NCBI RefSeq assembly: GCF_001194135.2 | Contig: NC_068999.1 | Location: forward strand, 31,905,035-31,938,729 | Reading direction: 5' to 3' | DNA length: 33,695 nt | DNA from: Octopus bimaculoides | Taxonomy: Eukaryota | Part shown: positions 1,639-33,695 of the stretch, piece after piece | How the letters are laid out: every line of letters starts with the position of its first letter | How positions within the stretch are numbered: position 1 is the stretch's first letter | Translations under genes and position numbers: made by a program | The notes under the pieces: model-generated | What the model saw: only the letters and a program-made list of their open reading frames with translations | What the model was told of the DNA's origin: nothing | The model's database searches: none

Positions 1639-1674
1639 TACAAGATCTGTATTTCCTACACGGTCATCAGTGTA
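1639..1674 (-). ncRNA. Candidate minimal type I hammerhead ribozyme (weak stems)
   Basis: Minus strand reads TACA-CTGATGA-CCGTGTAG-GAAA-TACAGA-TC-T-TGTA. Both core boxes and an AUC triplet are intact, but stem II has only one Watson-Crick pair and stem I has an extra base. Confidence 0.4.
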
Positions 1675-2499
1675 CAGAGGTGACATGATGCTATCTGTTG
1701 TAATCAATATGGTCAGTGACTAATTCTTTCTTGGTAGCAAACTGTTCTAATATTTATTTATGATAATATTAACTAATTTTTCTGACGTTAACTGTCTTCA
1801 TTAGTTATCTGGGATTTTGCTAGGACACACATACATTCATTCACAACAACAATATATATGAGGACATACACACATTCACAGATTTACAACTATATTCAAA
1901 CATACTTACACATATACATGTGTGTGTGCATAATTTGCAAACTGAGTTACAACTGTTTCCTAAGAATTATCCCTTTTTGTTTCCTTTTAACATATAAAGA
2001 GTGTACTAGTGGCATACAAATTCAAAGCTAAATATTCATAGGTTAGTCAAACAGATTCTAAATTATTCCTTAAGCAATTCTAATAATCTTTAGTTGTTTT
2101 ATCCTGCTCTAATGATTTTATTTTCATTCTACCTCTTTACTCAGCAAGTTCACACACACATATGTGTATAGTTATGTGTGTGTGTGTGTGCGTGTAATTT
2201 AGGCAATTATATATATATATATATATATAAAATTTAATAAAATATTATTATCATTATTAAAAATAACAATGATAATAATAATTATCGAAAATAACTAATA
2301 ATAAAGTGGCCAGCAAGTTTAATCTATATAGGCTAAAATATACAAATAAATTAGGGTACTGGAATGCCACTTGCTAGAAATAGGAGTTAACATTCTGAAG
2401 CCACAAATTTCTCAGTATTAAGAAACATACACGGTAAATGTAACAAATATAATAAAGATAAGCCTTACCTTGTATAAACCACAAAGCAAGAACAGATAT

Positions 2500-2556
2500 C
2501 TTGGTATCAATTGATTTCACCTTTTGTACATTAGTACTTAAGGATCATCAGCCAAG
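2500..2556 (-). ncRNA. Minimal type I hammerhead ribozyme
   Basis: CTTGG-CTGATGA-T CCTT AA GTAC TAAT GTAC AA AAGG T-GAAA-TCAATTGA-TA-CCAAG. Stem I is 5 bp perfect, stem II is bipartite, stem III is palindromic, triplet AUA. Confidence 0.8.
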
Positions 2557-2861
2557 CTTACTTTATTCATCTATTTTTCAAAACGTTCAAGTCATTAAAC
2601 CATGCACATTTAACCCCTATTTCTACCAAGTAGTATTCCAGTACCCTAATTTATTTGTATATTTTACCTATATAGGTTAAACTTGCTGACCATTTTATTA
2701 TTACTATTATTTCTAATAACAGTAATAATAATACTTTATTAAATTTTACATTGTACTTACTCACTTTATGTTCATTTTTGAACATTGAGGAAGCATTCAA
2801 ATGAACAAATGCACATGGTGTAATGAAATGAATATTTTGAAATATACACAAATGCAGTAAG

Positions 2862-2918
2862 CTTGGCTGATGATCCTTAAGTACTAACATACAAAATGTG
2901 AAATCAATTGATACCAAG
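2862..2918 (+). ncRNA. Minimal type I hammerhead ribozyme, inverted second copy
   Basis: CTTGG-CTGATGA(2867-2873)-stem II-GAAA(2900-2903)-TCAATTGA-TA-CCAAG. Core and stems I and III are identical to 2500-2556; stem II carries mismatches. Confidence 0.75.
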
Positions 2919-3133
2919 ATATCTGTTCTTGCTTTGTGGTTTATACAAGGTAAGGCCTATCTTTATTATATTTGTTACATTCACCGTGTATGTTTCTTAA
3001 TACTGAGAAATTTGTGGCTTCAGAATGTTAACTCCTATTTCTAGCAAGTGGTATTCCAGTACCCTAGTTTATTTGTATGTATGTATGTGTGTGTATGTAT
3101 GTATGTATGTATATATATATATATGTGTGTATG

Positions 3134-3172
<39 letters not shown>

Positions 3173-3177
<5 letters not shown>

Positions 3178-3599
3178 GAAGTATATTTGCCACTTCAATG
3201 TGGCTGACCCCTAAGGGTAGATGTTTTGCAAATACAGACAGGACACAGATGTGTGTCAATAGCCAGCTGGAGGAGATGTTCTCCTGGGGCTAAAAGCAAC
3301 AGTAACATCCAACCTTAGGGGTCAGCCACATTTAAGTGGCAAATATACTTCACTTTGTCTTGCAGTTACTGTTTATACCTCGTTCGGAGATTTAACATTG
3401 CTTGTTTTCACTTTTTCGAGGTCAGTGAATAATTTCACTGGAAAAAGATATATGTATTTGCATCGGGGTATCTTTTGCATCGAAGGTCGGCGATTGTCGT
3501 ACGCTGAGGACGGGTAAATATACGTGGCAAATATAAGTGGCAAAAAATATACTTCACTTTGTCGTGCAGTTACTGTTAATACCTCATTCAGAGATTTAA
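3173..3599. repeat. Inverted plus direct repeat block
   Basis: 3173-3225 and 3304-3356 are inverted (50/53 identical by eye). 3342-3395 and 3546-3599 are direct (50/54). Confidence 0.85.
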
Positions 3600-3840
3600 T
3601 ATATATATATATAAATAAAAAAAATTAAAAAAGGCGTTTTGTATGATAGTGTATAGAGGAATATATTATTTAAAAGAGTTCCAACTCTGTCTGTTTTTTA
3701 TGTTTTTATATTCTTATAGAATTAATGTGGGATATAGAATATGGAATATATAATATAAATAGTAAAATGAAATGAAGTATTGAATGTCTTATTGAATAAA
3801 TGAAATATTGAGTATATAAGGACATTAAATATATAAGGAC

Positions 3841-3880
3841 TAGTATACTTTCCTGCTTTATAGCAGTCATCAAGGATATC
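3841..3880 (-). ncRNA. Degenerate minimal hammerhead ribozyme
   Basis: GATATCC-TTGATGA-CTGCT ATAA AGCAG-GAAA-GTATAC-TA. Stem II is 5 bp perfect and stem III is palindromic (AGTATACT). The first core box is altered and stem I does not pair. Confidence 0.5.
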
Positions 3881-4430
3881 TTTATATCCAACTTAACATG
3901 GATGTTTTATTAGAACACCAAATACTGCATTATTAGCCTCGAGAGACCGTCTCATATAGGAACTTGGTGTGTAAAAGTGCACACATAAATCATAGCAGAT
4001 GCAAATCGTCTGTCTATGCATTCCAGAACTCTCATATCATGTGACTTCATTGTACTGGCAATCATCAGTGAGAATCATCCAGTCACCACATGCCAGTCAA
4101 ATATCGCTGTCACAACATATAAAATATTAGCATCTTTTCAGAAATTGAGGTCACAATTTGGTCAGCAGGCTTTTTATAAATTAATATATTAGTGATGGAA
4201 GCAGTATTACTACCAAAAAGGTAAATTTTATATCAAACTTAACAGGAATGTCTTGTTAGAACAGTGAATACTACATTATTGGCTTTATCTTTTTGCACCA
4301 AGCACCTATATGAAAGAATTTCTCAAGGCTAATAACACAGTATTAGGTGTTCTAACAAGGCTTCTATGTTAAGTTAGATATAAAGATTATCTTTTCATAA
4401 TATACTGCTAGCATCACTAATAAGTAATAT
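3875..4430. repeat. Second nested inverted/direct repeat block, PLE pseudo-LTR-like
   Basis: 3875-3980 is inverted relative to 4285-4390. 4225-4275 is a direct copy of 3880-3938. 4180-4213 is inverted relative to 4398-4430. Confidence 0.75.
4030..4073 (-). ncRNA. Minimal type I hammerhead ribozyme with one core substitution
   Basis: TCTCA-CTGATGA-TTG CCAGTA CAA T-GAAG-TCACATGA-TA-TGAGA. Stem I is 5 bp perfect, stem III is near-palindromic, triplet AUA; GAAA is changed to GAAG. Confidence 0.7.
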
Positions 4431-4447
4431 TTCAATATATAAACAAA

Positions 4448-4660
4448 GTGGCAAGCTGGCAGAATTGTTAGCATGGTGGGTAAAAATGCCATGCAGCATT
4501 TTGTCTGTCTTTACGTTTTGGGTTCAAATGCTCCTGGGGCCGACTTTTCCTTTAATCTTTTTGAAGTCAGTAAAACAAGTGCCAGTTAAGCATTGGAGTC
4601 GATTTAATCAATTTAGCCCCTCCTCCGAAATAGCTAGCCCCATGCCAAACTTTGGAACCT
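4448..4660 (+). mobile_element. tRNA-derived SINE family A, diverged
   Basis: Head GCTGGCAGAATTGTTAGCA, B-box-like GGGTTCAAAT, and a body alignable with 11783-12010. Confidence 0.75.
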
Positions 4661-4674
4661 ATATATATATATAT

Positions 4675-5489
4675 TAAAGAGGTGAGGAAACTTATATAAT
4701 CTTGACGTAAATCTCTATCACAAATTATTGAAAAAGGAAATTACCAAAGCTTACAAAATAGCTGACCAGAACGTTTTGAGGACTAATAATTTAATTGCTA
4801 AATGTATTATGGAGGGTTATCATTTGGAGGATAGAACTGAACTATTTGTTCCTAAAAGGTCTAAAAAAATTTTTTAAGACCATAAGGAGAATTTTTATAG
4901 TAACCCTAGAGTGTGCCTGATTTGCCCAGGGAATCAGATTTTGGGAATACTCAGTGAGGCCATTTTAGACAAGTATATTCCAATTCTTAAGAATAAGATT
5001 AAGTTGCATCTTTGGTCCAACTCCTATGAGGTTATCAATTGGTTTAATAAAATTGAGAATGGGGGTAGGAATGGGTTTATTCAAATAGATATTAATAATT
5101 CTTCTTCTATTTATCAAGTCATTTTAAACAAGATTCTAATATTTGCTCAATGTAATTCTCATTTAAGTATGGATGAAATTAAGATCATTTTGATGGCTAG
5201 ATCTGTTATTGAATTTGAGAATAAGTTTTGGATTAGAAAGGATAGTTATGATGGCTTTGATATTCCTATGGGGGCTAGGGATTCTGCTGAGGTTACAGAT
5301 ATTGTAGGTATTTACATTTTGTTTAAGTTAGGGTGTAAGTTTCCGGAGCTTGCAGGGGATTTATACCAGAATGACTCTTTGTTCACGGTTAAGAATGTTA
5401 CAAATATGAAATTAGATCTATATAAAAAGAAGTTCCACTGGATTTTTAGAGTTGTATATTGGTTCTGTACCAACTTGAATTTCAATTGA
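4675..5489 (+). mobile_element. Penelope-like element reverse transcriptase relic
   Basis: The translation matches PLE RT motifs: DHKENFYSNPRVCLICP, EVINWF, FIQIDI, FWIRK, FDIPMGARDSAEVTDIVGIYIL, and LYQND (decayed YRDD). There is a frameshift near 4878 and no GIY-YIG domain. Confidence 0.85.
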
Positions 5490-5611
5490 ATTAAAGTTCG
5501 TCTACACTTACAATTTTTTTCCTTTCCTTATACCTCATTTATATATATAACTACTGTGAGTATATATATATATATATATAAAGAGAGAGCTTTTGAAGTG
5601 ATGTACAGATA

Positions 5612-5822
5612 TTGTATATTGAGAATAACAAGGTAGTCAAAATGCTGGATGATTATATATATTTTTATTTACATTTTTAGTACTTTCTCCCGCTTTTGGA
5701 TTTAGTGCTTTCTTCCGTTATTGGAATTTTCTTCAAAAAATGGAAGAAAGCACTAGAAAATTAAATAAAAATATATATAATAATCCAACATTCTGACTAC
5801 CTTGTTATTCTCAATATATATA
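5612..5822. repeat. Inverted repeat (about 80 bp arms) downstream of the PLE relic
   Basis: 5612-5690 is inverted relative to 5743-5822 (TATTGAGAATAACAAGGTAGTC.../...GACTACCTTGTTATTCTCAATA). Confidence 0.8.
5672..5742 (-). ncRNA. Degenerate hammerhead-like motif with internal tandem duplication
   Basis: CATTTT-TTGAAGA-AAATTCC AATAAC GGAA-GAAAGCACT-AAATCCAAAAGCGGGA-GAAA-GTAC-TA-AAAATG. Stem I is 6 bp and stem III is palindromic (AGTACT). C3 is changed to T and a 25-26 nt unit is duplicated. Confidence 0.4.
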
Positions 5823-5826
5823 TGCA

Positions 5827-5867
<41 letters not shown>

Positions 5868-5957
5868 TTGTATGTATGTATATATATATATATATACAAA
5901 AATAAGAGGGATGACCAGCAAAAGTGGACTAGAAATAGATGCCGAATCATCTAACCA

Positions 5958-6380
5958 TGAAAAAAATATATGTTCTCAGTAAAAATTCAGCGACAAAGCA
6001 TAACAATTTAGAAATATCTCGATTATCAAAACTTGCCAGATCTCTTGTCTACAAAATTTGTAAGTAGCTAGAGACTGAAGATGGAAATGTATCACCAGTA
6101 TCAAAGCATAAAAAGCATTTTAAATGCTCTAAAATCACCAGAACACCTGAATTTATCTAGTAAGTTCAACAGACCATTGATTACAATCCCAGAAAGTCCA
6201 TGAGGTCAATTGCTAAAGATATCCATGTGTCAGAAGGAACAGTCAGAAATGTTGTTCACGTAGACATCTGATATAAGTCTAATATGATGGGGAAAGGTCA
6301 ATTTATCAGAAAAAGCAAAAGAAAATCTCTACATCAGATCTAAAAGGCTCTTAAACAAACTGAAAAATGCAGCAGAAGAA
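5958..6380 (+). mobile_element. Tc1/mariner-superfamily transposase relic (N-terminal HTH region)
   Basis: RTPEFI**VQQTIDYNPRKSMRSIAKDIHVSEGTVRNVVHVDI*YKSNMMGKGQF...RSKRLLNKLK. In-frame stops fit C-to-T changes; the DDE domain is absent. Confidence 0.7.
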
Positions 6381-7240
6381 GATTTTTATTTAATTTGCTT
6401 TGTGGGAGCAACTGTTTTACCGAAAGCATATATTGTTGTTAAACACTTGAAACACAAGACTAGATAAACAGCCAACAACTGATGAAAGGTCATTCTTTAT
6501 ATTGTTTGTTTTGTTTTCCATTTGTGGCTCACGTTGTTCGAAAGAATAGTTCATGTTTCATGTATTTGTACTTCATATTTTTTTTGTTGTACATATTTCT
6601 TGATGTCCTGTGCCACATGCATATATATATATATATATATATATANNNNNNNNNNNNNNNNNNNNNNNNNNNNNNNNNNNNNNNNNNNNNNNNNNNNNNN
6701 NNNNNNNNNNNNNNNNNNNNNNNNNNNNNNNNNNNNNNNNNNNNNNNNNNNNNNNNNNNNNNNNNNNNNNNNNNNNNNNNNNNNNNNNNNNNNNNNNNNN
6801 NNNNNNNNNNNNNNNNNNNNNNNNNNNNNNNNNNNNNNNNNNNNNNNNNNNNNNNNNNNNNNNNNNNNNNNNNNNNNNNNNNNNNNNNNNNNNNNNNNNN
6901 NNNNNNNNNNNNNNNNNNNNNNNNNNNNNNNNNNNNNNNNNNNNNNNNNNNNNNNNNNNNNNNNNNNNNNNNNNNNNNNNNNNNNNNNNNNNNNNNNNNN
7001 NNNNNNNNNNNNNNNNNNNNNNNNNNNNNNNNNNNNNNNNNNNNNNNNNNNNNNNNNNNNNNNNNNNNNNNNNNNNNNNNNNNNNNNNNNNNNNNNNNNN
7101 NNNNNNNNNNNNNNNNNNNNNNNNNNNNNNNNNNNNNNNNNNNNNNNNNNNNNNNNNNNNNNNNNNNNNNNNNNNNNNNNNNNNNNNNNNNNNNNNNNNN
7201 NNNNNNNNNNNNNNNNNNNNNNNNNNNNNNNNNNNNNNNN

Positions 7241-7412
7241 ACACACACACCGTTAAAATTTCCACTTATTTCTTATTTTTATTTTCCTAAAATTTTCGTT
7301 GCATCTTGCAACCTTTTCAATAGTCTTGACTCTTGGAAAGGTTGCAAGACGCAACGAAAATTTTAGGAAAATAAAAATAAGAAATAAGTGGAAATTTTAA
7401 CGGTGTGTGTGT
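7241..7412. repeat. Foldback/MITE-like palindrome, 80 bp arms with 12 nt loop
   Basis: 7241-7320 is the reverse complement of 7333-7412 with 2 mismatches. The ends are (AC)n/(GT)n and the left arm abuts an N gap. Confidence 0.85.
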
Positions 7413-8499
7413 TAAATTTTAAAGCATGATAAGAAAATGACTCTCCCCAGACACAACAGAATATTCTTCAACATACGAAATCACATAAAAAATCTTGCAA
7501 ACCAAATCCCAAAACGAAATATATGCATACATGTATATGTATACATATGTGTAGATGTATATATATAGATGTACATGTAATATGTACACATATATACATG
7601 CATACAGATATCTATACATATATACACCCCCACACACACACACACATACACATGTACACAAACACACACATTAGTCATTTGTTTTTTTATCCAAGACTAC
7701 GTCAAAAGTACTGAATGAATCTTTATGAAATTTGGAAATTATATTCTATGCATAACGGCCATAACCCCCATGAAAATTCATATATTTTTCATGTTGATGA
7801 AATTTTAACCATACATATTACACACAAATAAAGTAATATTTCTAAAATTTCTTCTTAGAAGTTACAAAGATCCCTTCATGGGGACTTCACACCCACAATT
7901 TAGTCATTTTTCCTAAGCAAAGACAAATACAGTTATACTATTGGAACCTATATGGTCACCCAAACGTAACAGATGAGCATTATTTGTAATTCAACAGTAA
8001 AACAGTGTAAGACTATCCTTTCAGATATACTTACATTGTGATTTCTGCAATGTGGTGCATAAATTGTCAAGTAAATGAGACGCATCTTTGCCTCCACTGA
8101 TTCACTTGCAAAGTATTGAGTAAAATTATTTCGTTGCAGACCTCCTTTGAGTCTTTTTATTACCACTGAGTCACACATAGTCCCCAGTTGGTAACATTGA
8201 TTTCAAGGCCTTCCCAGATGAGTGACTGGTTGTTCTAACACATTTATTGATTGTAAATTTTTTCTGCCCCAGTTACCTATCGGTATAGTGGTCACTTGCA
8301 AACTCCAGATGTGACACTTTCATTTCCCTTCACTCCAAACGTCACACATTGTTATTTCAAGTGGGTCATGCCCTTCCAATTGCTATAGATCCGTAATGCA
8401 TCTTACAGCTGTGCCTGTCACCTGTATGGGGATGAATCCTACATTGGGGAGTAGTAACGACTATGCTAGGGTAGCCGACTGATTATCATGATCATTTGT

Positions 8500-8903
8500 C
8501 TTTTGGTTTCCTGTAGTTTTACTCTCTTTTACAAACCCAGTGAACAAACATATATTTCCTATTTCAAAGAGATTCAAACAATACATATTAGACCCAAGTT
8601 AAAAACATTCCCAACAATTCAACTTCTCTGGTTGACATTAACACACCCATCCCCTATTGGGGCCTTAACTCCCACATTTTTCATCTCCAAGCGCTCCATT
8701 TTTCAGGAGCAAAATCCTTTTTACAGGGTATGTATATAGGTATACATATATATGTACATATTTACGTATAGATATAAGTATGTACATATATAGTCATACA
8801 TATAAATATTATTTATATGTGTGTATATATATATACATCTGCGTGTGTGAGTGTGTGTGTGTATATATGTATATGTATATATATATGTGTGTATGTATAT
8901 ATA

Positions 8904-8963
<60 letters not shown>

Positions 8964-10560
8964 TATATATGTGTATGTATATATGTGTGTGTGTGTGTAT
9001 CATTCACCCATGGTAGTAAGTAAATAATATTTTCGAAGTCAACATTTACATTTTTGTAACTACTTCACACCTAGCTAATTCAATCCTTGACTGAACTATA
9101 TAAGATTAAATTCATTGAAAGAAGCAGTACTCCACTGTTTTGAGATATTGTAACAGAAAATTGGTGGGTAAAAAGAAATAGTTATGATAAAAAAGAAACG
9201 TGTTTAAAAATGAGTGAGTAATGCATAGATCCACCTGTTGAGCCAGATAGCTTCCTTAATTCGTTATTATGGGCCCAGTAGTAGAAACCTTAAGAGGCAA
9301 AAAGTGATCAAATCAAAAAGAGAGTATTATATATCTTGATATCTATCCCTGTTGTTAAAAAGTAATTTAGTCTAGTTAATTTTTCTTTAAAGATCTATAT
9401 GAGAGATATTTAATTTTGTAAACCTCATCAAATTTGGTACAGGAAAAGAAAAAAACTTATGGGGTAATAAATGGTCTCTTTTGATGGAGATCACTGAGGC
9501 ACCAAACTGTAAATGTGCTTTTGTGTGTGTGTGTGTGTGTATGTGTGTGCATATATATATATAGTAAAATAAGGATTCAGATAGAATCAAGTACTTGGAA
9601 AGATATGCACCAGGTAGGGTTGGATTAACCTGTAGTTCTGGCCCATGCTTGATAAGTATCAAACAGGATATTCCAGTTGTGAACACAGAAAAAAAGCAAC
9701 CCTATGAGTATTTAGTGCCTAGGGGCTGGTCCAAAGCACACATTACATTGAATTGTACTTTGTTGGTATACTCTAGGGCGTACGACAAGTCATAAATTCC
9801 CTTGATGTATTATAATCTTTTTCTTCTGATTTTTCCTCTAACTCCATACTAGGTGTAGCTTATTATGTAACTCCCTCTTCCTTTGAACTCCTTAATAGTA
9901 CTCTACTATTACTACCAGGTTTTTCCTCTCCAGGCAAACGTTTTAATATTACAAACAGTCTCCACTAACCCATATAACATATTCATATCTAAAGCAACAT
10001 CCTACATCTTTCCACTTTATCAGATAAATCAATCATGCATAACACTACAATTCCTAAAAAGTCAGAACTTACCATTTGACTGCCTTCATACCCTCCCCCA
10101 ACTTTCAACCTATATCTGCAGAATATCCCTCAATTCTGTGTATCTCTGCCCTCCTCCTGTTGTTCTTTAGCCTTAACTAGCAAATCCTAAACCCCAACCC
10201 TATACCTAATTGGCTTTATTTATGCATTTATTTTGCTTCACTTTTACTTTTTACTTTCTTTATTCTTTATTTATCTTCGGTCCTCTCCCAGCTACCCACT
10301 TCTCTAAGTCTGCTATAATAAAAATATCACCTACACCCCACCTCTAGCCTATCAAAGAACCATTCTAGCAAATTCCTATCTCACCTGGGTCACTGACCTT
10401 AAATATCATATTACACCCTTTCACAAACTATATTATTAACCTAACCCCACCCCTTAATAGCTACAACAGCCACCTTTGTAGGCCATTCTCCCATTTCATA
10501 GTTAGTCTCGGACTTCAGCCACGTCCCTGCTGTATTCTTGGGATATTCTTTTGTTTGTAA
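8500..10560 (-). mobile_element. Heavily decayed second Penelope-like element
   Basis: Collinear minus-strand motifs: LLEWFFDRLE/DIFIIADLEKW (about 10300-10375), GGYEGSQMVSSDFLGIVVL (10042-10098, like MGSYDGAEVCELVGLYIL), ISFYPPIFCYNIS (9141-9179, like IWFNPPF), and a weak Cys/GIY-YIG-like remnant at 8550-8700. The G/T strand skew matches 4675-5489. Confidence 0.55.
8736..9000. repeat. Compound (TA)n/(TG)n microsatellite
   Basis: Read directly. It is one of many similar tracts (e.g. 1050-1185, 3075-3172, 7520-7670, 15060-15195, 18030-18125, 29360-29530). Confidence 0.95.
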
Positions 10561-10568
10561 GATTATGT

Positions 10569-10652
10569 TTCATCTGATGATTATGGTTTTTTGTAATGGA
10601 GTAATGTTCTCATTCTTCTATTAAAAAATGCATGAGAAACAGGTGTAGTGAG
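10569..10652 (+). ncRNA. Type I hammerhead ribozyme with extended stem II
   Basis: TTCAT-CTGATGA(10574-10580)-long imperfect hairpin 10581-10635-GAAA(10636-10639)-CAGGTG-TA-GTGAG. Stem III is ACA/TGT and the triplet is GUA. Stem I is 5 bp including two G-U pairs. Confidence 0.65.
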
Positions 10653-11434
10653 CTGTTATCATTCAGTTGATTGTATATATATATATANNNNNNNNNNNNN
10701 NNNNNNNNNNNNNNNNNNNNNNNNNNNNNNNNNNNNNNNNNNNNNNNNNNNNNNNNNNNNNNNNNNNNNNNNNNNNNNNNNNNNNNNNNNNNNNNNNNNN
10801 NNNNNNNNNNNNNNNNNNNNNNNNNNNNNNNNNNNNNNNNNNNNNNNNNNNNNNNNNNNNNNNNNNNNNNNNNNNNNNNNNNNNNNNNNNNNNNNNNNNN
10901 NNNNNNNNNNNNNNNNNNNNNNNNNNNNNNNNNNNNNNNNNNNNNNNNNNNNNNNNNNNNNNNNNNNNNNNNNNNNNNNNNNNNNNNNNNNNNNNNNNNN
11001 NNNNNNNNNNNNNNNNNNNNNNNNNNNNNNNNNNNNNNNNNNNNNNNNNNNNNNNNNNNNNNNNNNNNNNNNNNNNNNNNNNNNNNNNNNNNNNNNNNNN
11101 NNNNNNNNNNNNNNNNNNNNNNNNNNNNNNNNNNNNNNNNNNNNNNNNNNNNNNNNNNNNNNNNNNNNNNNNNNNNNNNNNNNNNNNNNNNNNNNNNNNN
11201 NNNNNNNNNNNNNNNNNNNNNNNNNNNNNNNNNNNNNNNNNNNNNNNNNNNNNNNNNNNNNNNNNNNNNNNNNNNNNNNNNNNNNNNNNNNNNNNNNNNN
11301 NNNNNNNNNNNNNNNNNNNNNNNNNNNNNNNNNNNNNNNNNNNNNNNNNNNNNNNNNNNNNNNNNNNNNNNNNNNNNNNNNNNNNNNNNNNNNNNNNNNN
11401 NNNNNNNNNNNNNNNNNNNNNNNNNNNNNNNNNN

Positions 11435-11472
<38 letters not shown>

Positions 11473-11782: not shown

Positions 11783-12010
11783 CTGAGCTGACAGAACTGT
11801 TAGCACACTGGGTGAAATGCTTAGTGGTATTTCGTCTGCCGTTATGTTCTGAGTTCAAATTCTGCCGAGGTCGACTTTGCCTTTCATCCTTTCGGGGTCA
11901 ATTAAATAAGTACCAGTTACGCATTCGGGTCAATGTAATTGACTTAATCCCTTCACCTGTCCTTGTTTGTCCCCTCTCTGTTTAACCCCCTGTGGGCAAT
12001 AAAGAAATAA
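11783..12010 (+). mobile_element. tRNA-derived SINE family A, near full length
   Basis: A-box-like GAGCTGACAGAACTGTTAG, B-box-like GAGTTCAAATTC, central GCCTTTCATCCTTTCGGGGTC, and tail AATAAAGAAATAA. Confidence 0.9.
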
Positions 12011-13062
12011 ATCTTTCAGACAGTGTATGGAAACACTGATGGCCTGATGAATGTAGTTATGCAAAGTGTAGCTGTCCTAAGTCTTAGAATTCTAGCATTT
12101 GGTTACATTAAATTTTAACAAACCAGCATTGGGTGCTCTCACCTTGTATATGTTACCATATTTTTCAGCATGAAAGATGTACTTTTTATTTAAAACAAAA
12201 AGAAAAAATACCTTCAAAATTATTGTGCATCTTCTATGATGCTAGCTGAGAATTTGTTGCTATGAATAGTCAGGATTTGAAGAGGAATGAAATGCTTTCA
12301 GCTGTTTTGCTGGACATGATTTTTAGAGGTTTACAGCCTTTTCCTAACTTTTATTATTTACTTATTTGAAATATTAAATATTAAAATGCTTTTTTACTTT
12401 CACTCTAGTTTTTCTTTTGTTTTTTTTTGCAAAATAAATTAAGACATATACATTTACCTACTTTCTACTAAGGAAAGTATTCTTTATTGTACAGATAAAA
12501 TAAAAAACTAAAGAATGTAAATAGTACAGCCCATTAGATACATAGAGAAAGTGTCATATGTTTTTTTACTTATTCTTTATTAAAAGTTGATGACATAACC
12601 AGTAAATGACTGATGTTGGTTAAGGCCTGTCCACACACTCAAGCAGTACCCAGCAGTGTGTTACCATGCACATAGGGTGGCTGGCAGCAGTTGTGGTCAA
12701 GCACTGGTAGGTAGTCAGCAGTAATGTTTTTGGTATGATGGCCATGATGTTTCACATCAATAATTGCAGGACAATTAAAGAGAAGAGCAAAGTGCTGTGT
12801 ACAGCAATAAACCACCAAGTAGGTGGCTATTGTATGATGATTATGCTCAATAATGGGCATAAGCACTACACTGGCCTACATGCCAATTTTGTCTCACAGC
12901 CATTTATCATGTGACCACTAAGTACTACCTGATTGTGTGGATCCTTTTGGTAAGTGTAAAAACCTTTTTTCCAAGAATTATATTTCTAAAATCAGAGAGT
13001 ATTTCTATGATGCAGCATCTACCTTGTCACAAAATAAGGTAACCCATATGTTAATATTTATG

Positions 13063-13283
13063 AAGGTGGTGCGCTGGCAGAAACGTCAGCATGCTGGGTG
13101 AAATGCTTAGCAGTATTTCGTCTGTCTTTACGTTCTGAGTTCAAATTCCACCGAAGTCGACTTTGCCTTTCATCCTTTCAGGGTCAATAAATTAAGTACC
13201 AGCTGTGTACTGGGGTCAGTCTAATCGACTGGGCCCCACCTCCCTAAAAATTTTGGGCCTTATGCCTAGAGTAGAAAAGGATA
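13063..13283 (+). mobile_element. tRNA-derived SINE family A
   Basis: Same head and central domain as 11783-12010, with a different 3' tail. Confidence 0.9.
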
Positions 13284-15678: not shown

Positions 15679-15912
15679 TATTTCTTTACTGCCCACAAGG
15701 GGCTACACACAGAGGGGACAAACGAGGACAGACAAACAGATTAAGTCGATTATATCGACCCCAGTGCATAACTGGTACTTATTTAATCAACCTCAAAAGG
15801 ATGAAAGGCAAAGTCAACCTCGGCAGAATTTTAACTCAGAACATAACGGCAGATGAAATACTGCTAAGCATTTCACCCGGCATGCTAACGATTCTGCCAG
15901 GTCGCCGCCTTA
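15679..15912 (-). mobile_element. tRNA-derived SINE family A, near full length
   Basis: Reverse complement of the 11783-12010 family, including head and tail. Confidence 0.9.
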
Positions 15913-16345
15913 ACTTTCATCTTATAAGATGAGGCAGTCATTATATCTGTCTGTCCACCNNNNNNNNNNNNNNNNNNNNNNNNNNNNNNNNNNNNNNNNN
16001 NNNNNNNNNNNNNNNNNNNNNNNNNNNNNNNNNNNNNNNNNNNNNNNNNNNNNNNNNNNNNNNNNNNNNNNNNNNNNNNNNNNNNNNNNNNNNNNNNNNN
16101 NNNNNNNNNNNNNNNNNNNNNNNNNNNNNNNNNNNNNNNNNNNNNNNNNNNNNNNNNNNNNNNNNNNNNNNNNNNNNNNNNNNNNNNNNNNNNNNNNNNN
16201 NNNNNNNNNNNNNNNNNNNNNNNNNNNNNNNNNNNNNNNNNNNNNNNNNNNTTCTTTGTATCGTCTATCTAGATGTTTTGTTGTCCCTTTTTTGTATCAC
16301 CAAACTGTCTGGATGTTTTGCGTTCTTGTCCCATTTTATATTTTA

Positions 16346-16408
<63 letters not shown>

Positions 16409-16953
16409 CAGCATACATACACTTTGGTCTCTTATATATATATATTGTGATACTTTGTCATACCTTTCAGTAGTTTCAGGTTTTGTTATCAATGCTTCAT
16501 ATATCATTGCTTTTGAAAGACAGTCACCTTCTGGATAAGTAGAACGATTTTGACAGTTATCTATTGGTTGCTGAAGTGAAGACTATATAGGTATACAGGT
16601 ATGTTTCTGGTTATGGTGTGTGATTCTGACAACAATGATATGCAAACTGGAATAGCTGCCCTTAAATGTATTGCTGTGAAAAATTTTGTTGTATTTGTGA
16701 GAAATGTTTATTTCATTTAATTTTGTTTTGGTTGGTTGGAAATAACTTACAGGAAGCAGGATGTTCTGTTATAGCAGTGATAACATCAGTGCTCTATGGT
16801 GGATTAAACGAGGTGATATCTATTTTTCTTAGTTCTTTTCTGATGTGTCTGTATGAAAGTTATTTTTACTGAAGCTAAGCTACCTTTATCTAATGTATTG
16901 TCATACTGGAACTTTAAGGATGCCTCTGTCCAACAATAGGTTAAATAAAAATT

Positions 16954-20230: not shown

Positions 20231-20460
20231 AAGGCAACAAGCAGGTAGAAATCATTATTAGCACATCAGACAAAGTGGTTAGCAGCATTTCTTTTGGCTT
20301 TTTACCTTCTGAGTTCAAATACCACAGAAGTTGACGTTGACTTTCAGTGTCAATTAAATATCTAGCAATTCTGCACTGGGTTGAGGTAGTTAATTTATCC
20401 TCCTCCAACTAAAATTGGGGCCTTGTGCCAAAATCTGAAACTATTATTATTATTATTATT
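20231..20460 (+). mobile_element. Diverged SINE family A with (TAT)n tail
   Basis: CTGAGTTCAAATACC box, and a tail like those of 4448-4660 and 21998-22210. Confidence 0.7.
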
Positions 20461-21004: not shown

Positions 21005-22790
21005 GCAATTATCATTATTAAAACTATAACTTACTACTTTAGTTAGCAAGAATGTTGTCTTATGGTTTGGTGACAACAAATCTCAAGAATCTTTCTTTGA
21101 ATTCTTGCAGAATACCAGGTTACACTTTTCTGAACAATGTGAATCTCAATTGCTATAGTTTTCAGGCTCTTTGGTTTGGATGTTGTGCCAAGTGCACCAA
21201 TTACTACAGGATCAATTGTTAACTTAGTCTTCCACAATCTCTTCATCACTCTGGCCAGGTCCTCATATTTCTCAATTTATTTGGAATCAACATGACATTG
21301 CAAAGTGTACAATCTCACACACATTTTTTGTCATCTATTTCCCTCAATAGTACAGCCAGTCTTTATGTGAAAATCCCATAAGATTCTGTAATTATTATTC
21401 TCCATTACAGCCTCTGGCTCATGTTCATACCACATTTTTACTACTTTCAATCTACACACTCATTTACCATCCCAGTGCACATTTTTACCGATGTAGTCAT
21501 GCCTGCATTTATACTTATTTTGTGCTACCTTACTACCTTCACTCAAGAGATGGTTAAAATTTTTCTCCTCTTTCCCACAGATTCTACATTTACTTTCTGA
21601 TGTGTTTTATCAATCTTTGCTTTTATCAAATTCATTCTAATGGCTTGTTCTTGAGCAGCTATAATTTGTGGCCCAGTGTCTCATTTCAGGTTACTATCTG
21701 TTTGCCACAACCACTGTTCTTTACATCTAACATCCTCAGTCTGTTGTGTTAATTGGCACAATAATTCCTTCTCTGGTTAGCTATTTTTCCTGTTGTTTTT
21801 TCTAGCTGTTCTTGAATTTTCATTGGCTTTTTGAATATTAATAGCCACTGATAGTATTTTTTTTTTTTCACTATACACAACAAAGTTTTTTAAACCCAAT
21901 ACCGCAATAATAACAGTGTTTTCTGCATTCAAAAATCCACTGCCTCTTTTATTCCTTAGCAGGTAAAACCTTTTAATATTAGTTTTAAGGTAAAGTTGGT
22001 GAGCTGGCAGAATCATTAGCATGCTGGACAAAATGTTTAGTGGCATTTCGTTCATCTTTATGTTCTGACTTCAAATTCCACTGAGGTCAACTTTGCCTTT
22101 CGTCCTTTCAATATCGATAGATTAGTACCAGTTAAACACTGGGTTTGATCTAATCAACTTACCCCTCTCCCTGAACTTGTTGGCTTTGTGCCAAAATTTG
22201 AAATCAATATCACTTTTGGGATGGTGTGCATTGTGAGCAGCTTACTGATTCTTCTAATTCCTGTAGATCAGTCTTTCTCCATTTTAGAAAAGGAGCAGAG
22301 TGTCATAATACAAACATGACCTACATATTTATTGATTTCATAATATTTCCTCTATTTTGATTTTGTTTTGAGCTTGTTCTTCATTCTTCATTTGTACTCT
22401 TCGGAAATTTTCTCCCTCATTTCTCCTTCCATTACCTTATTGTCTTGCAACATGCCAAGGTACATGTATTCTTCATTATTTCATAATCTTGTGATAACTT
22501 TATACCCTAAGAGTTTATATTTCTGTCTCGCTTCATAATTAACACTGCATACTCATTTGCCCCAAACTGTGTTCCATTATCGTTGCTAAATCTTGTTACT
22601 GCTTGGATCAGAGAATCCAGATCTTTCTCATTTTTTTAAAATACAGTTTGAGGTCATCCATAAAGCAAGTGATTTATTTTCACCTTGGTTTTGGCAAACC
22701 TATCTTGGTACACTTGTCAGGAGGATTAACCCAATTACAAAAGCAATGGAGAGAACAAGTCTCCCTGGAATATCCTCCTGCATATTTTCA
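21005..22790 (-). mobile_element. R4/Dong-clade non-LTR retrotransposon relic (RT, zinc knuckle, restriction-like endonuclease)
   Basis: FQGDLFSPLLF (22741-22772), HLL-MDDLKLY (about 22645-22675, frameshifted), RFYLLRNKRGSG, IAAQEQAIRMN, CRICG...NHL (21551-21588), WYEHEPE, ILWDF, EKYEDLA, LW...PVVIGALG, then a TAA-rich 3' end. Confidence 0.9.
21998..22210 (+). mobile_element. SINE family A inserted into the R4 relic
   Basis: Clear head and box motifs; R4 coding remnants continue on both sides. Confidence 0.9.
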
Positions 22791-30049: not shown

Positions 30050-32258
30050 TGTAATCATTAAGCCTGGAGGGAAGTTAACATCTCTGACTTGATCCACAAA
30101 CTCCCGGACCAGCTGGTACATATTCAACCTGGAATGATCAAAGAAGATACCATGGCACCTGAATATGTATTTCATCTGTAAAAATTAACCTAAATGTTGA
30201 ATTTCTAACAAAGACTTTCTGTGTGTCATACTACACTGTTTCATCTGAATGTTTCCATTAATTGCATTGTATGAACATCTTCTGTACTAATGTAACAAAT
30301 TATTTTCTAATGTATAAAGAAGCCTTCCATTGTTACAAAAGTATCACACAGTGGAGAATCGCAGAAACTTCAGGTATTCCAAGAATAACATGAACCTCAG
30401 CTATTATAACAGAAGGAACAATATCTCAAACAATGGGGTTGAAGGCTTCAGAAGTTGATCTATATGTCATTCTAATACATTTCTACCTGCTCTTGCTTCA
30501 AAACAGACAGCTTCCACCTAAATGTTCACCAGCTCCAAAATTCTGTACAAGAACATGATTGTCCTTTTTAAATATACACAGCTAATGTAATATCTTCCCT
30601 GTTTTTTCCATATTATATTGGCCCCCTAGAGCTCGATGACAAGTATCTGGATTCAATAGGTGAAAAGCAGTCTGTAAGTGACATTTGAACAATTCAGCAG
30701 AATCTCCAGTTGTTAAATGCTGAGTAATTCTGAAAGAGAACAAGAACCAGTCGACCTTAGTTTCGAATGCCCCTTTCCCATCCACTTCCATCCTTTCCAT
30801 TGCCTTTCGTGAATGTGCAGTGCACGCTCAGCCAGCTGATTTGTTCGGCAATTTCCATAAAGAATTTTTATTTATTTACCTTTGTTTCCATATCCCACTG
30901 AAGCCAACATTTGCCTTTCGAATCGGCAAGAGAGGTGACAAGCGAAACAGACACTTACACACACTCATAGATCTACTGTCTTTCTTACACATTTACATAC
31001 ATAAAAACATATACATCTTTTTTGTATGTATGTGTATGTGTGTGTGTGAGCAAGTGAATGTGTTTTCTAGTGTGTGTTTCACTATTCAACTCATGGATAT
31101 GAAAGCAGCATTCTTGAAAGGTAGATGCTGGCTTCAACAGGACATGAAAATAAAAGTAAATAAATAAAAATTCTTTACGGAAATTGTCGAACAAATCAGT
31201 TGGTTATTTTGACAATATTGCTACTTTCATCGAAAGAATGCCATTACTGCTCCAACTCCATCGGGAGAAGCATCAACATGTACAAGAATTGGTCCGGATG
31301 GGTAAAAGTGTGCCGATGAAGGTGCAGAATACAACATATTCTTGCTAACTTTGAAAACCCTTTCCAGTCTGCACACCATTCCCATGCTTTTTCCTTTTTT
31401 GTTTTTAACAAACTATTCGGTTGCTCCATGAACATTGACAAATTCAGTAAATAATGATTGTAACAACCTGTAGGGACACTATTCATTATGGAACCATAAT
31501 ATACTATAAAGTACATTAAACATTTTTATAAGTCAATGTTGTGTTCTACTGTGTTAGCAGTGCTATCAAATCACTTAAGAAATTATAACCAGCACTGAAT
31601 TTGTTATGACGTTTTCATATCCAGATGCCAATATAAACAACAATGAGATTGAAGATGAAAAATTGGTTATGGGCATATATAACATATTTTAGGGGTTTTT
31701 GCTTCTTCATCAACACCTGTCCAACCCATTAACCATTCACAAACTAATTGCTTAAATAACCACTAAATATAACAGTGTAACATTATTGAACATACCAATT
31801 TTACATATTAAACACATTCCTGGAAGCTGGCACGTAAATATTAATGACCTCTAGAGAAACTGTATTTCGTAATGCAACCATAATATACTACAAAGTATAT
31901 TAAACGTTTCTATAGAAAATCTGTAGAGATAACCTTAACAAATGATTATAATAGTTCAGTGCCCCAGTATAACCTTTCAAGTCAGTAACACTTTTTGATG
32001 AAGAGGCTTCTTGCATCACAACAATTTTCTCTGGAAGGGGAGCTATGCCTTCTTCACACATTCTCAAATTAAGATAGGTCACTTCTGGAAGAAATAATTG
32101 ACATTTAGTCTGTTTTCTTATTTAAGCCCTGCCCTATCTGATACAGATGATACTCATAAGATCACTGGTATCATTAATTCTCGAAACTAAAATATCACCT
32201 ACTTCACTTTAAAGAAAGGAAGGTCTTTCAACCACTTTTCATTTCTAGTTCAAAGATA
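30050..32258 (-). mobile_element. Old Ty3/gypsy pol relic (RT, RNase H start, integrase C-terminal half), interrupted
   Basis: In RT-RH-IN order: GDILVS and KCQLFLPEVTYL...GIAPLPEK...LNYYN (31930-32210), LNLS...LLK...WEW and VHVDASPDGVGAV (31220-31460), LAERA and TKVDWFLFSFRITQHLTTGDSAEL (30580-30830), VLVQNFG and HIDQL (30450-30560). Confidence 0.8.
30832..31203. repeat. Inverted repeat (about 90 bp well-aligned arms) around a CA/TG microsatellite, inside the gypsy relic
   Basis: CCAGCTGATTTGTTCGGCAATTTCCATAAAGAATTTTTATTT... at 30832 is the reverse complement of ...AAATAAAAATTCTTTACGGAAATTGTCGAACAAATCAGTTGG ending at 31203. Confidence 0.8.
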
Positions 32259-33389: not shown

Positions 33390-33695
33390 NNNNNNNNNNA
33401 GTGGACATTTCCGCTGAGTCAGTTGCTTGAGCTTTCATTTCTAATTGGATTACTCGCTTTGGTGTCCCAGCTAAGATAACCACTAATTGTGGATGCCAGT
33501 TCGAGGCTTCTCTATTTCGTGAATTGTCATGAATCCTAGGCGTTCATCACATTCGTACGACCAGCTACCACCCAGCCTCCAATGCACCTTTGACCACACC
33601 ATCACCTACACCAGGACAGGCCGCACTGTGCATTGGCCCAAAAAACTCACTAAAACTATTTATATCTGACAATCTCTTTTGTGTTTCCTGTGACA

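What the first reader, a model, noticed from the sequence alone, without database searches (positions are those of the whole stretch)
1639..10652. Cluster of sequence-distinct minimal hammerhead ribozymes around Penelope-like relics
Up to eight hammerhead-like motifs of about six different sequences lie within 9 kb (1639, 2500, 2862, 3841, 4030, 5672, 6415, 10569), and I found none convincing in the remaining 23 kb. Seen in sequence: core boxes, paired stems and different palindromic or near-palindromic stem III sequences (TCAATTGA, GTATAC, TCACATGA, GTAC, ACA-GG-TGT). Established: PLEs carry minimal type I hammerheads with short palindromic stem III that can cleave as dimers, and non-autonomous hammerhead retroelements (retrozymes) make small circular RNAs in metazoans. 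Inference: this is a hotspot of several PLE or retrozyme families, and I am not aware that these particular families are described.
Basis: partly seen in the sequence, partly recalled or inferred. Interest (0 to 1): 0.85.

Follow-up and report, generated by a model that had tools for sequence, protein, structure and literature searches.

The report
Penelope-like element hammerhead ribozyme relics
Five of the eight proposed sites are real hammerhead-ribozyme motifs left by a known kind of jumping gene (Hydra-clade Penelope-like retroelements) that inserts into TA-repeat DNA, so the find is genuine but ordinary.

Summary
Partly confirmed. Five of the eight sites, from four unrelated sequences, are type I hammerhead-like motifs well above chance: 2500-2556(-), its inverted-repeat copy 2862-2918(+), 10569-10652(+), 4027-4076(-) and 3840-3873(-). 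The first three have a complete catalytic core. 4027 has G at 15.1 and 3840 has U3 and no helix I. Sites 1639, 5672 and 6415 are only isolated boxes.

The RT relic at 4647-5573(+), and a second at 16418-16750(-), belong to the Hydra clade of Penelope-like elements (PLEs). I fetched intact Hydra-clade PLEs from public assemblies. Their flanking repeats carry hammerheads of the same build: 3-8 bp helix I, CUGANGA, a variable helix II often closed by a U.U mismatch, then GAAA, a 6-8 nt palindrome and UA, in several cases ending at (TA)n.

A covariance model trained only on those external ribozymes ranks 2500, 2862 and 4027 as the top three window hits (E = 1e-4 to 9e-3). Site 10569 scores like the genuine long-helix-II examples.

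Rfam finds none of the genuine ones, so its silence on the window means nothing. There are no tandem arrays, so there is no evidence for retrozymes. This is a known kind of element, possibly in undescribed families. The "hotspot" is weak and is explained by the (TA)n target preference.

The parts
2500..2556 (-). Best hammerhead. Helix I CUUGG (2556-2552) pairs with CCAAG (2504-2500). Core CUGAUGA is at 2551-2545. Helix II is at 2544-2519: a U.U closing mismatch, CCUU/AAGG, then GUAC/GUAC with a UAAU loop. GAAA is at 2518-2515. The palindrome UCAAUUGA is at 2514-2507. U16.1 and A17 are at 2506-2505, so predicted cleavage falls between 2505 and 2504.
   Evidence: Descriptor hits, none in shuffles. 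The minimum-free-energy fold keeps helices I and II, z = -3.1. External covariance model R2 gives 26.6 bits, E = 1e-4. The 10-bp helix III homodimer is -11 kcal/mol, against 0 for the monomer.
2862..2918 (+). Inverted-repeat paralogue of the motif above. The core (2867-2873), GAAA (2900-2903), palindrome (2904-2911), UA (2912-2913) and helix I are identical. Helix II carries three substitutions, two of which break pairs.
   Evidence: Inverted-repeat arms 2340-2611 and 2807-3078 are 93% identical. It does not fold, z = +0.4. R2 gives 21.7 bits, E = 2.5e-3.
2232..3078 (.). Complex insertion carrying the two motifs. Copy 1 is inverted and runs 2611 down to 2296, with low-complexity homology to about 2232. 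Copy 2 is the 3' part only, 2610 to about 2752. A spacer of about 55 nt follows. Copy 3 runs 2807-3078. The outer ends run into (TA)n / (TATG)n tracts. Copies 1 and 3 start at the same nucleotide, 55 nt upstream of the ribozyme.
   Evidence: Alignment A4, self-BLAST, and the sequence itself. The layout (an inverted copy next to a partial direct copy plus a unit) matches the PLE insertion structures described in PMC8557442 and the divergent ribozyme pair in L009 at 1881-1915(-) and 1944-1981(+).
10569..10687 (+). Hammerhead at the 3' end of an element. Helix I UUCAU (10569-10573) pairs with GUGAG (10648-10652). Core CUGAUGA is at 10574-10580. Helix II is a 55-nt long hairpin at 10581-10635. GAAA is at 10636-10639. 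Helix III inner sequence CAGGUG is at 10640-10645. UA is at 10646-10647. A 21-nt tail (10653-10673) leads to (TA)n at 10674-10687, and then the gap.
   Evidence: Descriptor hit against 0.015 expected. The fold has a roughly 23-bp helix II, z = -2.9, like the genuine L008 ribozyme with its 55-nt helix II, z = -3.4. CAGGUG resembles the external consensus CAGAUCUG / CAGACUG / CAGACCUG. The tail-plus-(TA)n ending matches L001 and L009. R2 gives only 10.4 bits, E = 2.7, the same level as genuine L008 and L009 at 12.6 and 12.3 bits.
4027..4076 (-). Degenerate hammerhead. Helix I is 8 bp: GAUUCUCA (4076-4069) with UGAGAGUU (4034-4027). Core CUGAUGA is at 4068-4062. Helix II is UUG/CAA with one extra U (4061-4049). 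The second box reads GAAG (4048-4045), so position 15.1 is G rather than A. The near-palindrome UCACAUGA is at 4044-4037. UA is at 4036-4035.
   Evidence: Relaxed descriptor A gives no hit in 300 shuffles. R2 gives 19.6 bits, E = 9e-3. It does not fold as a monomer.
3840..3873 (-). Hammerhead-like fragment without helix I. The 5' box is UUGAUGA (3873-3867), a U3.G8 variant. Helix II is CUGC-UAUAAA-GCAG (3866-3853). GAAA is at 3852-3849. The palindrome GUAUAC is at 3848-3843. UA is at 3842-3841. It begins exactly where repeat Y (3878-3969) ends, and a (TA)n tract lies 225 nt downstream at 3600-3615.
   Evidence: Relaxed descriptor B expects 0.013 per window. Neither covariance model finds it. 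A U3-A8 core occurs in the genuine L002-L007 ribozymes and is published for Cercyon PLEs (PMC4209133). Reading it as a 5'-truncated copy is an inference.
4647..5573 (+). Relic of a Hydra-clade PLE reverse transcriptase, covering residues of about 160-416 out of about 720. It has in-frame stops and is bounded by (TA)n tracts on both sides.
   Evidence: tblastn with full-length relatives gives E = 1e-52. There are 1295 relatives. Their alignment shows the RWK/RWR motif, the DKT motif, YRDD, the CxCX5C linker, a C-terminal GIY-YIG domain, and CxxC...E...N...CxH, as defined for the Hydra clade in PMC8557442. There is no Pfam RVT_1 or GIY-YIG hit.
16418..16750 (-). Second Hydra-clade PLE relic, matching residues of about 521-595. 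Its 3' continuation runs into the gap at 15960-16251. It lies outside the finding's range.
   Evidence: tblastn, E = 1e-6.

Best explanation
The region holds decayed remains of several independent insertions of Hydra-clade Penelope-like retroelements, or of short non-autonomous derivatives of their flanking repeats (pLTRs). Each insertion brought along the type I hammerhead ribozyme that these elements carry in the pLTR.

Mechanism, taken from published PLE biology and not shown here: a tandem or read-through transcript contains two ribozyme copies. Helix III is a short palindrome that cannot fold on its own, so the two copies pair through it. Each then cleaves after U16.1-A17, which trims the retroelement RNA to unit length. 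The element's GIY-YIG endonuclease and RT then insert the copy into (TA)n microsatellites. This often produces 5'-truncated, tandem and inverted copies.

In this window, 2500(-) and 10569(+) still have an intact core and all three helices, so they could cleave as dimers if transcribed. Site 2862(+) has lost helix II. Site 4027(-) has a 15.1 mutation. Site 3840(-) has lost helix I. No intact ORF remains.

Shown here: the motifs, their statistics, their fit to a model trained only on external ribozymes, the clade of the RT relic, the (TA)n junctions and the inverted/tandem layout.

Inferred: that each motif came from a PLE, and that any of them cleaves.
For: (1) Motifs exceed chance.

(2) The RT relics are Hydra-clade PLE.

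(3) Genuine Hydra-clade PLE loci carry hammerheads of the same build in repeats on both sides of the ORF. These are L001, L002-L007, L008/L009 and L010-L015. Examples are L001 3845 and 7501, L010 32 and 2467, and L012 446 and 2873.

(4) Those external ribozymes covary. All helix I pairs and two of three helix II pairs show changes on both sides, and the covariation score is 0.73 against 0.19 in shuffles. That alignment is fitted to the model, which favours the structure.

(5) Covariance models trained only on the external ribozymes rank 2500, 2862 and 4027 as the top three window hits, and 10569 next.

(6) Features that the descriptor did not demand are shared. Position 10.1-11.1 is unpaired in 7 of 11 distinct external ribozymes, and is U.U in 2500. 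The palindrome TCAATTGA is identical in L014 and in 2500. A 55-nt helix II occurs in L008 and in 10569. A tail followed by (TA)n occurs in L001, L009 and 10569.

(7) Helix III is stable only as a homodimer, in the window motifs and the external ones alike.

(8) The divergent, opposite-strand pair 2500/2862 mirrors L009 1881(-)/1944(+) and the dual opposite-strand motifs reported in PMC4209133.
Against: - No ribozyme is contiguous with a PLE ORF in the window. The RT relic is on the opposite strand to 3840 and 4027 and is truncated at both ends.
- No other genomic copies could be retrieved, so family membership, consensus and covariation within the host genome are untested.
- The only paralogue pair (2500 and 2862) differs by pair-breaking changes, not compensatory ones.
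- Site 10569 has E = 2.7 with the model, and site 3840 is not detected at all.
- The relaxed descriptors for 4027 and 3840 were written after seeing those sites.
- In 2500, 2862 and 3840 the distance from the ribozyme to the (TA)n tract is 150-320 nt, not the 21-37 nt seen in L001 and L009.
- The complex at 2296-2703 can also be read as a MITE with 95-nt terminal inverted repeats.
- Cleavage has not been tested.
Confidence: 0.75

Rival explanations
1. The motifs are chance matches. AT-rich, microsatellite-rich DNA throws up CUGAUGA and GAAA boxes with short complementary flanks, and a reader looking for hammerheads will find them.
For: CTGANGA occurs at exactly the chance rate. Three of the eight sites are indeed only boxes. 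An extended descriptor gives about 0.5 chance hits per window and does return two obvious false hits, at 5215 and 32019. Rfam reports no hammerhead.
Against: Complete descriptors give 0-0.08 expected against 2-3 observed. Models trained only on external ribozymes put three of the sites at the top of the window with E = 1e-4 to 9e-3. Features not used in the search are shared with genuine ribozymes. Rfam is equally blind to all the genuine Hydra-clade ribozymes.
Confidence: 0.05
2. The motifs belong to metazoan non-LTR retrozymes. These are short non-autonomous elements arranged as direct tandem monomers, each with a type I hammerhead, which are expressed as small circular RNAs.
For: Copies 1 and 3 of the 2500/2862 element begin at the same nucleotide. 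This suggests a discrete short unit of about 0.37-0.42 kb rather than random 5' truncation. Sites 4027 and 3840 lie in tandem on one strand, 190 nt apart. A 2026 preprint argues that animal retrozymes derive from PLE pLTRs, so the two categories overlap.
Against: TRF finds no direct tandem array with a period up to 500. Self-BLAST finds none either. The two copies of the one repeated ribozyme are inverted, not tandem. Sites 4027 and 3840 share no flanking similarity. The motifs follow the PLE minimal build, not the canonical loop-loop type I of retrozymes that Rfam RF00163 detects.
Confidence: 0.12
3. The 2296-2703 structure is a foldback or MITE-type DNA transposon with terminal inverted repeats of about 95 nt. 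The second partial copy lies at 2807-3078. On this reading the hammerhead-like sequence inside is a passenger or a coincidence.
For: 2296-2390 and 2610-2703 are 92% inverted copies flanking the 220-nt segment that holds the motif. The window contains several other MITE-like foldbacks, at 3173-3356, 5615-5818 and 7241-7412.
Against: The second copy lacks the left 'terminal repeat', which cut-and-paste elements do not normally lose. The internal motif scores E = 1e-4 against a PLE ribozyme model. The same layout is described for PLE insertions. The ends lie in (TA)n tracts, as for Hydra-clade PLEs.
Confidence: 0.08

Closest known systems
Hammerheads of Hydra-clade Penelope-like elements (Craig et al. 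2021, PMC8557442)
   Same: The RT relic has relatives with all the clade hallmarks. The ribozymes have the same build as those I extracted from intact Hydra-clade loci: a short helix I, a variable helix II that is often closed by a non-Watson-Crick pair, then GAAA, a 6-8 nt palindrome and UA. Insertion is at (TA)n. Copies are tandem or inverted.
   Different: All window copies are relics detached from any ORF. Three have tails of 150-320 nt, not about 30-40 nt. Two have core or helix defects. The host families were not compared with Repbase.
Minimal PLE hammerheads (Cervera and de la Pena 2014, PMC4209133; Lunse et al. 2017, cited but not read)
   Same: Type I topology, a palindromic helix III that requires a dimer, a short helix I, a large helix II, an unpaired nucleotide next to helix II, pairs on opposite strands 100-700 bp apart, and high sequence diversity within one genome.
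   Different: The published consensus has a conserved G10.1-C11.1 pair. Here, and in most external Hydra-clade examples, that position is U.U or otherwise unpaired. Helix III is longer here, at 8-10 bp as a dimer.
Metazoan non-LTR retrozymes (Cervera and de la Pena 2020, PMC7229834)
   Same: Non-autonomous elements that carry a type I hammerhead. A possible short unit of about 0.4 kb exists for the 2500/2862 element.
   Different: There are no direct tandem monomers and no canonical loop 1-loop 2 ribozyme. Circular RNA is untested.
Rfam Hammerhead_1 (RF00163) and the other Rfam hammerhead models
   Same: The catalytic core and the three-helix junction.
   Different: None of the window motifs reaches even E = 10. 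None of the genuine Hydra-clade PLE ribozymes is reported either, at gathering score in L001-L007 or at E <= 1 in L008-L015.

Membership tests
Hammerhead ribozyme (type I) | Conserved core: C3 U4 G5 A6 N7 G8 A9, then G12 A13 A14, the A15.1-U16.1 pair, and H17 | tested here: met
   Complete in 2500(-), 2862(+) and 10569(+). Not met in 4027(-), which has G15.1 and an extra U before G12, in 3840(-), which has U3, or in 1639, 5672 and 6415.
Hammerhead ribozyme (type I) | Three helices around the core, with the 5' and 3' ends in helix I | tested here: met
   2500: helix I 5 bp, helix II 4+4 bp, helix III 10 bp as a dimer. 10569: helix I 5 bp, helix II about 23 bp, helix III 3+3 bp. 2862 has lost helix II. 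3840 has no helix I. 1639 has neither helix I nor helix II.
Hammerhead ribozyme (type I) | Match to a curated Rfam hammerhead model | tested here: not met
   No hit at gathering score or at E <= 10, even when only 481 nt were searched. As a control, the same models report none of the genuine PLE ribozymes in 15 external loci, so this failure carries little weight.
Hammerhead ribozyme (type I) | Site-specific self-cleavage after H17 | not testable with these tools
   This needs in vitro transcription of monomer and dimer constructs, or mapping of RNA ends.
PLE (Hydra-clade) pLTR hammerhead | Significant score against a structure model trained only on ribozymes from intact Hydra-clade PLE loci | tested here: met
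   Model R2: 2500 E = 1e-4, 2862 E = 2.5e-3, 4027 E = 9e-3. For 10569, E = 2.7 is inconclusive, since genuine L008 and L009 score 0.7-0.8. 3840 is not detected.
PLE (Hydra-clade) pLTR hammerhead | Short palindromic helix III that is stable only between two molecules | tested here: met
   Homodimer energies run from -3.6 to -11 kcal/mol, against about 0 for the monomer. The external ribozymes behave the same way.
PLE (Hydra-clade) pLTR hammerhead | Location in a repeat that flanks a PLE RT-GIY-YIG ORF | tested here: inconclusive
   Hydra-clade RT relics exist at 4647-5573(+) and 16418-16750(-), but no ribozyme is contiguous with them. The 2232-3078 complex has the inverted-plus-tandem layout typical of PLEs.
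PLE (Hydra-clade) pLTR hammerhead | Insertion into (TA)n microsatellites | tested here: met
   10569 is followed by a 21-nt tail and then (TA)n. The 2500 and 2862 copies and 3840 end at (TA)n or (TATG)n tracts 150-320 nt downstream. External L001 and L009 show the same. The preference is published in PMC8557442.
PLE (Hydra-clade) pLTR hammerhead | Multi-copy families in the host genome with compensatory changes in the helices | not testable with these tools
   No host genome is available. A peptide look-up across the 2500 motif found nothing. The one paralogue pair shows only pair-breaking changes.
Hydra clade of PLEs (protein) | RWK motif, DKT in place of DKG, CxCX5C linker, C-terminal GIY-YIG without CCHH, no CxC/IFD | tested here: met
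   All are seen in full-length relatives of the window relic (alignment A1) and checked against the definition in PMC8557442. The relic itself covers only the RT core, from DHKENF to YQND, so its membership is by homology (E = 1e-52).
Metazoan non-LTR retrozyme | Direct tandem repeats of 170-400 nt monomers, each with the same type I hammerhead | tested here: not met
   TRF finds only microsatellites and periods up to 36. Self-BLAST finds no direct repeats that carry a ribozyme.
Metazoan non-LTR retrozyme | Expression as small circular RNA | not testable with these tools
   No transcriptome data are available.

The most novel reading that the evidence does not exclude
Two readings remain open. 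First, the 2500/2862 element may be a discrete, previously undescribed non-autonomous derivative of a Hydra-clade PLE, about 0.4 kb long and carrying a hammerhead. That would make it an animal 'retrozyme-like' element in what looks like a mollusc genome, and its ribozyme is still intact. Second, Hydra-clade PLE hammerheads may form a recognisable ribozyme subclass that every current Rfam model misses. Its marks would be a non-Watson-Crick 10.1-11.1 position, an 8-10 bp intermolecular helix III, and a helix II of anything from 10 to 56 nt.
Probability: 0.3. Interest if true: 0.45.

Novelty: new member of a known kind. Interest (0 to 1): 0.3.

Why it matters
It matters little for biology at large. 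Hammerheads in Penelope-like elements, the Hydra clade, its presence in molluscs and its (TA)n targeting are all published.

Two practical points follow. First, the standard annotation route (Rfam/Infernal) misses this whole class of ribozyme. Genome annotations therefore under-report them, and a small dedicated covariance model recovers them. Second, the locus shows how (TA)n microsatellites collect successive PLE 3' ends. Those same tracts are where this assembly breaks into gaps.

Tried and rejected
- Rfam at gathering score and at E <= 10, on the whole window and on 2470-2950, found no hammerhead. I rejected this as evidence once the same result was obtained for genuine PLE ribozymes.
- I tried to retrieve other genomic copies by searching the protein database with spurious ORFs that span the motifs. 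A chimeric query timed out, and the 72-aa peptide across 2500 had no candidates.
- Pfam on the RT relic and on eight full-length relatives gave no RVT_1 or GIY-YIG hit. The clade was assigned from motifs in the alignment instead.
- MAFFT on the untrimmed external ribozymes misaligned the long helix II and helix III. I replaced it with a trimmed seed alignment and a model-guided realignment.
- Pairwise alignment of the flanks of the four ribozyme families found no similarity, so they are not one family.
- I tried reading 3840 as a type III hammerhead with the hairpin GGAUAU-AAAG-AUAUCC as helix I. Helix III would not pair, so I rejected it.
- I tried reading 1639, 5672 and 6415 as permuted or variant-core hammerheads. 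No helices support this.
- A weak Pfam CRIM hit for ORF 7948-8178(-) was not supported by a PDB sequence search.
- The supplements of the two key papers are not held. Lunse et al. 2017 is not held.

Full report
**Setting and gaps.** The window is AT-rich metazoan DNA (GC 0.20-0.44). It is full of (TA)n, (TG)n and (TATG)n microsatellites, foldback repeats and about six copies of a SINE-like repeat. From memory it looks like a cephalopod genome; I could not verify this.

There are four assembly gaps: 6646-7240, 10688-11434, 15960-16251 and 33390-33399. None of the eight proposed motifs spans a gap. The first gap sits between a (TA)n tract and a (CA)n tract. The second starts inside the (TA)n tract that follows motif 10569 and resumes as (TA)n at 11435. 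The gaps therefore do not affect any single motif. They do make the '9 kb' span an estimate, and they may hide further copies.

**Is the observation more than chance?** The 5' box alone is not: CTGANGA occurs 15 times against 14.7 expected. Complete motifs are.

- A type I descriptor (helix I >=4 bp, CUGANGA, helix II >=3 bp, GAAA, 2-14 nt, U-H) finds 10574-10652(+) and 2500-2551(-). Dinucleotide-preserving shuffles give 0.01-0.05 sites per window.
- After I had extracted ribozymes from genuine elements (see below), I wrote a descriptor from their layout alone, adding a 6-8 nt palindrome after GAAA. It again returns only these two sites, and none in 100 shuffles.
- Relaxed versions that tolerate GAAG, U3, or a missing helix I also capture 4027-4076(-) and 3840-3873(-), with 0.00-0.08 expected (300 shuffles). 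These relaxed versions were tuned after seeing the sites, so their p-values are optimistic.
- A deliberately loose descriptor gives about 0.5 chance hits per window and does return two obvious false positives, at 5215 and 32019. This marks where noise begins.

**Site by site.**

- 2500(-) reads cuugg-CUGAUGA-u-ccuu-aa-guac-uaau-guac-aa-aagg-u-GAAA-ucaauuga-UA-ccaag. The core is complete and helix I is 5 bp. Helix II is 4+4 bp, and the unconstrained minimum-free-energy fold recovers it (z = -3.1). A15.1 through U16.1 forms a perfect 10-nt palindrome.
- 2862(+) is the same sequence in the other arm of a 272-nt, 93% inverted repeat. Its three differences all fall in helix II and two of them break pairs. 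It no longer folds.
- 10569(+) has a complete core and a 5-bp helix I. Its 55-nt helix II folds into a long hairpin (z = -2.9). Helix III is ACA-GG-UGU. A 21-nt tail and then (TA)n follow.
- 4027(-) has an 8-bp helix I and a correct 5' box. It reads GAAG (G at 15.1), has an extra U, and carries a 6-of-8 palindrome.
- 3840(-) has UUGAUGA, a good 4-bp helix II, GAAA-GUAUAC-UA, and no helix I.
- 1639 has both boxes 8 nt apart but neither helix I nor helix II.
- 5672 has only GAAA-GUAC-UA.
- 6415 has only scattered boxes.

So five sites, representing four sequences, stand and three fall.

**What the neighbouring 'Penelope-like relic' is.**

- *The relic.* The stop-free stretch 4878-5486(+) has no Pfam hit. 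It does have 1295 relatives in the representative library.
- *Its relatives.* The full-length relatives, of about 620-900 aa, also lack Pfam RVT_1 and GIY-YIG hits. Their alignment shows an N-terminal RLRWR/K motif, ADKTxN, TLKDHKxNF...CRLINP, FDVTMGS...GLYRDDGL, a CNCx5C linker, a C-terminal VVYxA...YIGST...FKxR...H block (GIY-YIG), and CxxC...E...N...CxH.
- *The clade.* This is point for point the definition of the Hydra clade of PLEs. That definition lists an RWK motif, DKT in place of DKG, a divergent RT4, a CxCX5C linker, no CCHH, length under 3 kb, canonical hammerheads, insertion into (TA)n, and presence in Cnidaria, Mollusca, Echinodermata and Arthropoda (PMC8557442).
- *Placement in the window.* tblastn places one relic at 4647-5573(+), covering residues of about 160-416, and a second at 16418-16750(-) beside a gap.

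**What genuine Hydra-clade ribozymes look like.** I fetched 15 loci that encode intact relatives.

- Rfam reports no hammerhead in any of them. Its silence on the window is therefore uninformative.
- My descriptor finds a ribozyme in the repeats flanking the ORFs of most families.
- In L001 a 220-nt pLTR occurs on both sides of the ORF. Both copies are bounded by (TA)n, and the ribozyme lies 32 nt from the 3' end.
- The ribozymes share a 3-8 bp helix I, CUGANGA (or the U3-A8 variant in L002-L007), and a helix II of 10 to 56 nt. After GAAA comes a 6-8 nt palindrome (CAGAUCUG, CAGACUG, CAGACCUG, CAAAUUUG, UAAAUUUA, CUAAUAG), then UA.
- Helix III has no stability as a monomer and -6 to -16 kcal/mol as a homodimer. 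The window motifs behave the same way.
- The external set covaries strongly in helices I and II. In 7 of 11 distinct sequences position 10.1-11.1 is unpaired, usually U.U, exactly as in 2500.
- L014 even carries the same palindrome, UCAAUUGA.
- L008 and L009 have a 55-56 nt hairpin as helix II, like 10569.

**Independent membership test.** I built covariance models from the external ribozymes only: R1 from a trimmed seed, and R2 from the model-guided alignment of the natural sequences.

| Site | R2 score (bits) | E-value |
|---|---|---|
| 2500 | 26.6 | 1e-4 |
| 2862 | 21.7 | 2.5e-3 |
| 4027 | 19.6 | 9e-3 |
| 10569 | 10.4 | 2.7 |
| L008 (genuine, long helix II) | 12.6 | 0.72 |
| L009 (genuine, long helix II) | 12.3 | 0.84 |

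The first four rows are the top four hits of R2 in the window. The long insertion in helix II is what costs 10569, L008 and L009 their score. Site 3840 is not found. Sites 1639 and 5672 score 8.8-9.6 bits, among the noise.

**Architecture.**

- *The 2232-3078 complex.* It consists of an inverted copy (2611 down to 2296/2232), a direct copy of the 3' part only (2610 to about 2752), a 55-nt spacer, and a third copy (2807-3078). Its outer ends run into (TA)n and (TATG)n tracts.
- *Precedents for this layout.* This is the 'inverted 5'-truncated copy next to a partial tandem' layout drawn for PLEs (PMC8557442). The two ribozymes point away from each other, as in L009 and as reported for Schistosoma (PMC4209133).
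- *A possible short unit.* Copies 1 and 3 begin at the same nucleotide. That hints at a discrete short unit of about 0.4 kb, possibly non-autonomous.
- *Site 3840.* It starts exactly where another repeat (Y, 3878-3969) ends. This fits a copy truncated at its 5' end inside the ribozyme, which would explain the missing helix I. That is an inference.
- *Tandem arrays.* TRF finds no long-period tandem arrays, so nothing here looks like a retrozyme array.

**Conclusion.**

- *What the region is.* It is a graveyard of Hydra-clade PLE 3' ends, or pLTR-derived fragments, that landed in (TA)n tracts. Two ribozymes are still intact (2500 and 10569) and three are decayed.
- *The proposed function.* It is taken from the literature and not shown here: dimer-dependent self-cleavage that trims tandem transcripts to unit length before reverse transcription.
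- *The clustering.* It is weak. There are three or four independent complexes, a further PLE relic lies at 16.4 kb, and other (TA)n tracts in the window are unoccupied. The target preference accounts for it.
The elements are new members of a known kind.

Noticed in passing
window 33131-33389 and 33400-33658: Two 259-bp stretches are 100% identical direct copies on either side of a 10-N gap. This is most likely an unmerged overlap, that is, an assembly artefact.
   Followed up: no
window 7241-7412; also 5615-5818, 3173-3356 and 30832-31203: Near-perfect foldback (MITE-like) inverted repeats. The first is 172 nt at 95%, framed by (CA)n and (TG)n, and abuts the gap at 7240. These and the microsatellites account for all the sub-threshold 'miRNA' Rfam hits.
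   Followed up: partly
window 4427-4626, 11784-12009, 13046-13243, 15679-15911, 20269-20440, 21987-22210: About six diverged copies (70-85% identity) of one SINE-like repeat of about 200 nt, on both strands. One copy directly precedes the PLE RT relic.
   Followed up: no
window 5900-6400 (+): A decayed reading frame gives only sub-threshold helix-turn-helix hits (HTH_24, CENP-B_N, HTH_Tnp_Tc3_2). It is possibly the N-terminus of a Tc1/mariner-type transposase. Site 6415 lies just after it.
   Followed up: partly
window 16418-16750 (-): A second Hydra-clade PLE relic, from the C-terminal half of the RT (E = 1e-6). Its 3' part, and any ribozyme it had, would fall in the gap at 15960-16251.
   Followed up: partly
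loci L001-L015 (external Hydra-clade PLEs): Rfam 15 reports no hammerhead in any of the 15 loci, although a small home-made model finds 14. In 7 of 11 distinct ribozymes the 10.1-11.1 position is unpaired, whereas the published PLE consensus has G-C there.
   Followed up: partly
loci L002-L007, e.g. L003 3385-3438: One Hydra-clade family uses the U3-A8 core variant (UUGAUAA). It has an 8-bp helix I and visible compensatory changes in helix II between copies (ucUgug/cauAgu against ucAgug/cauUgu).
   Followed up: no
locus L008 2050-2167: A near-threshold 5S rRNA match (34.5 bits against a gathering score of 38) lies about 0.8 kb upstream of a Hydra-clade PLE ORF.
   Followed up: no
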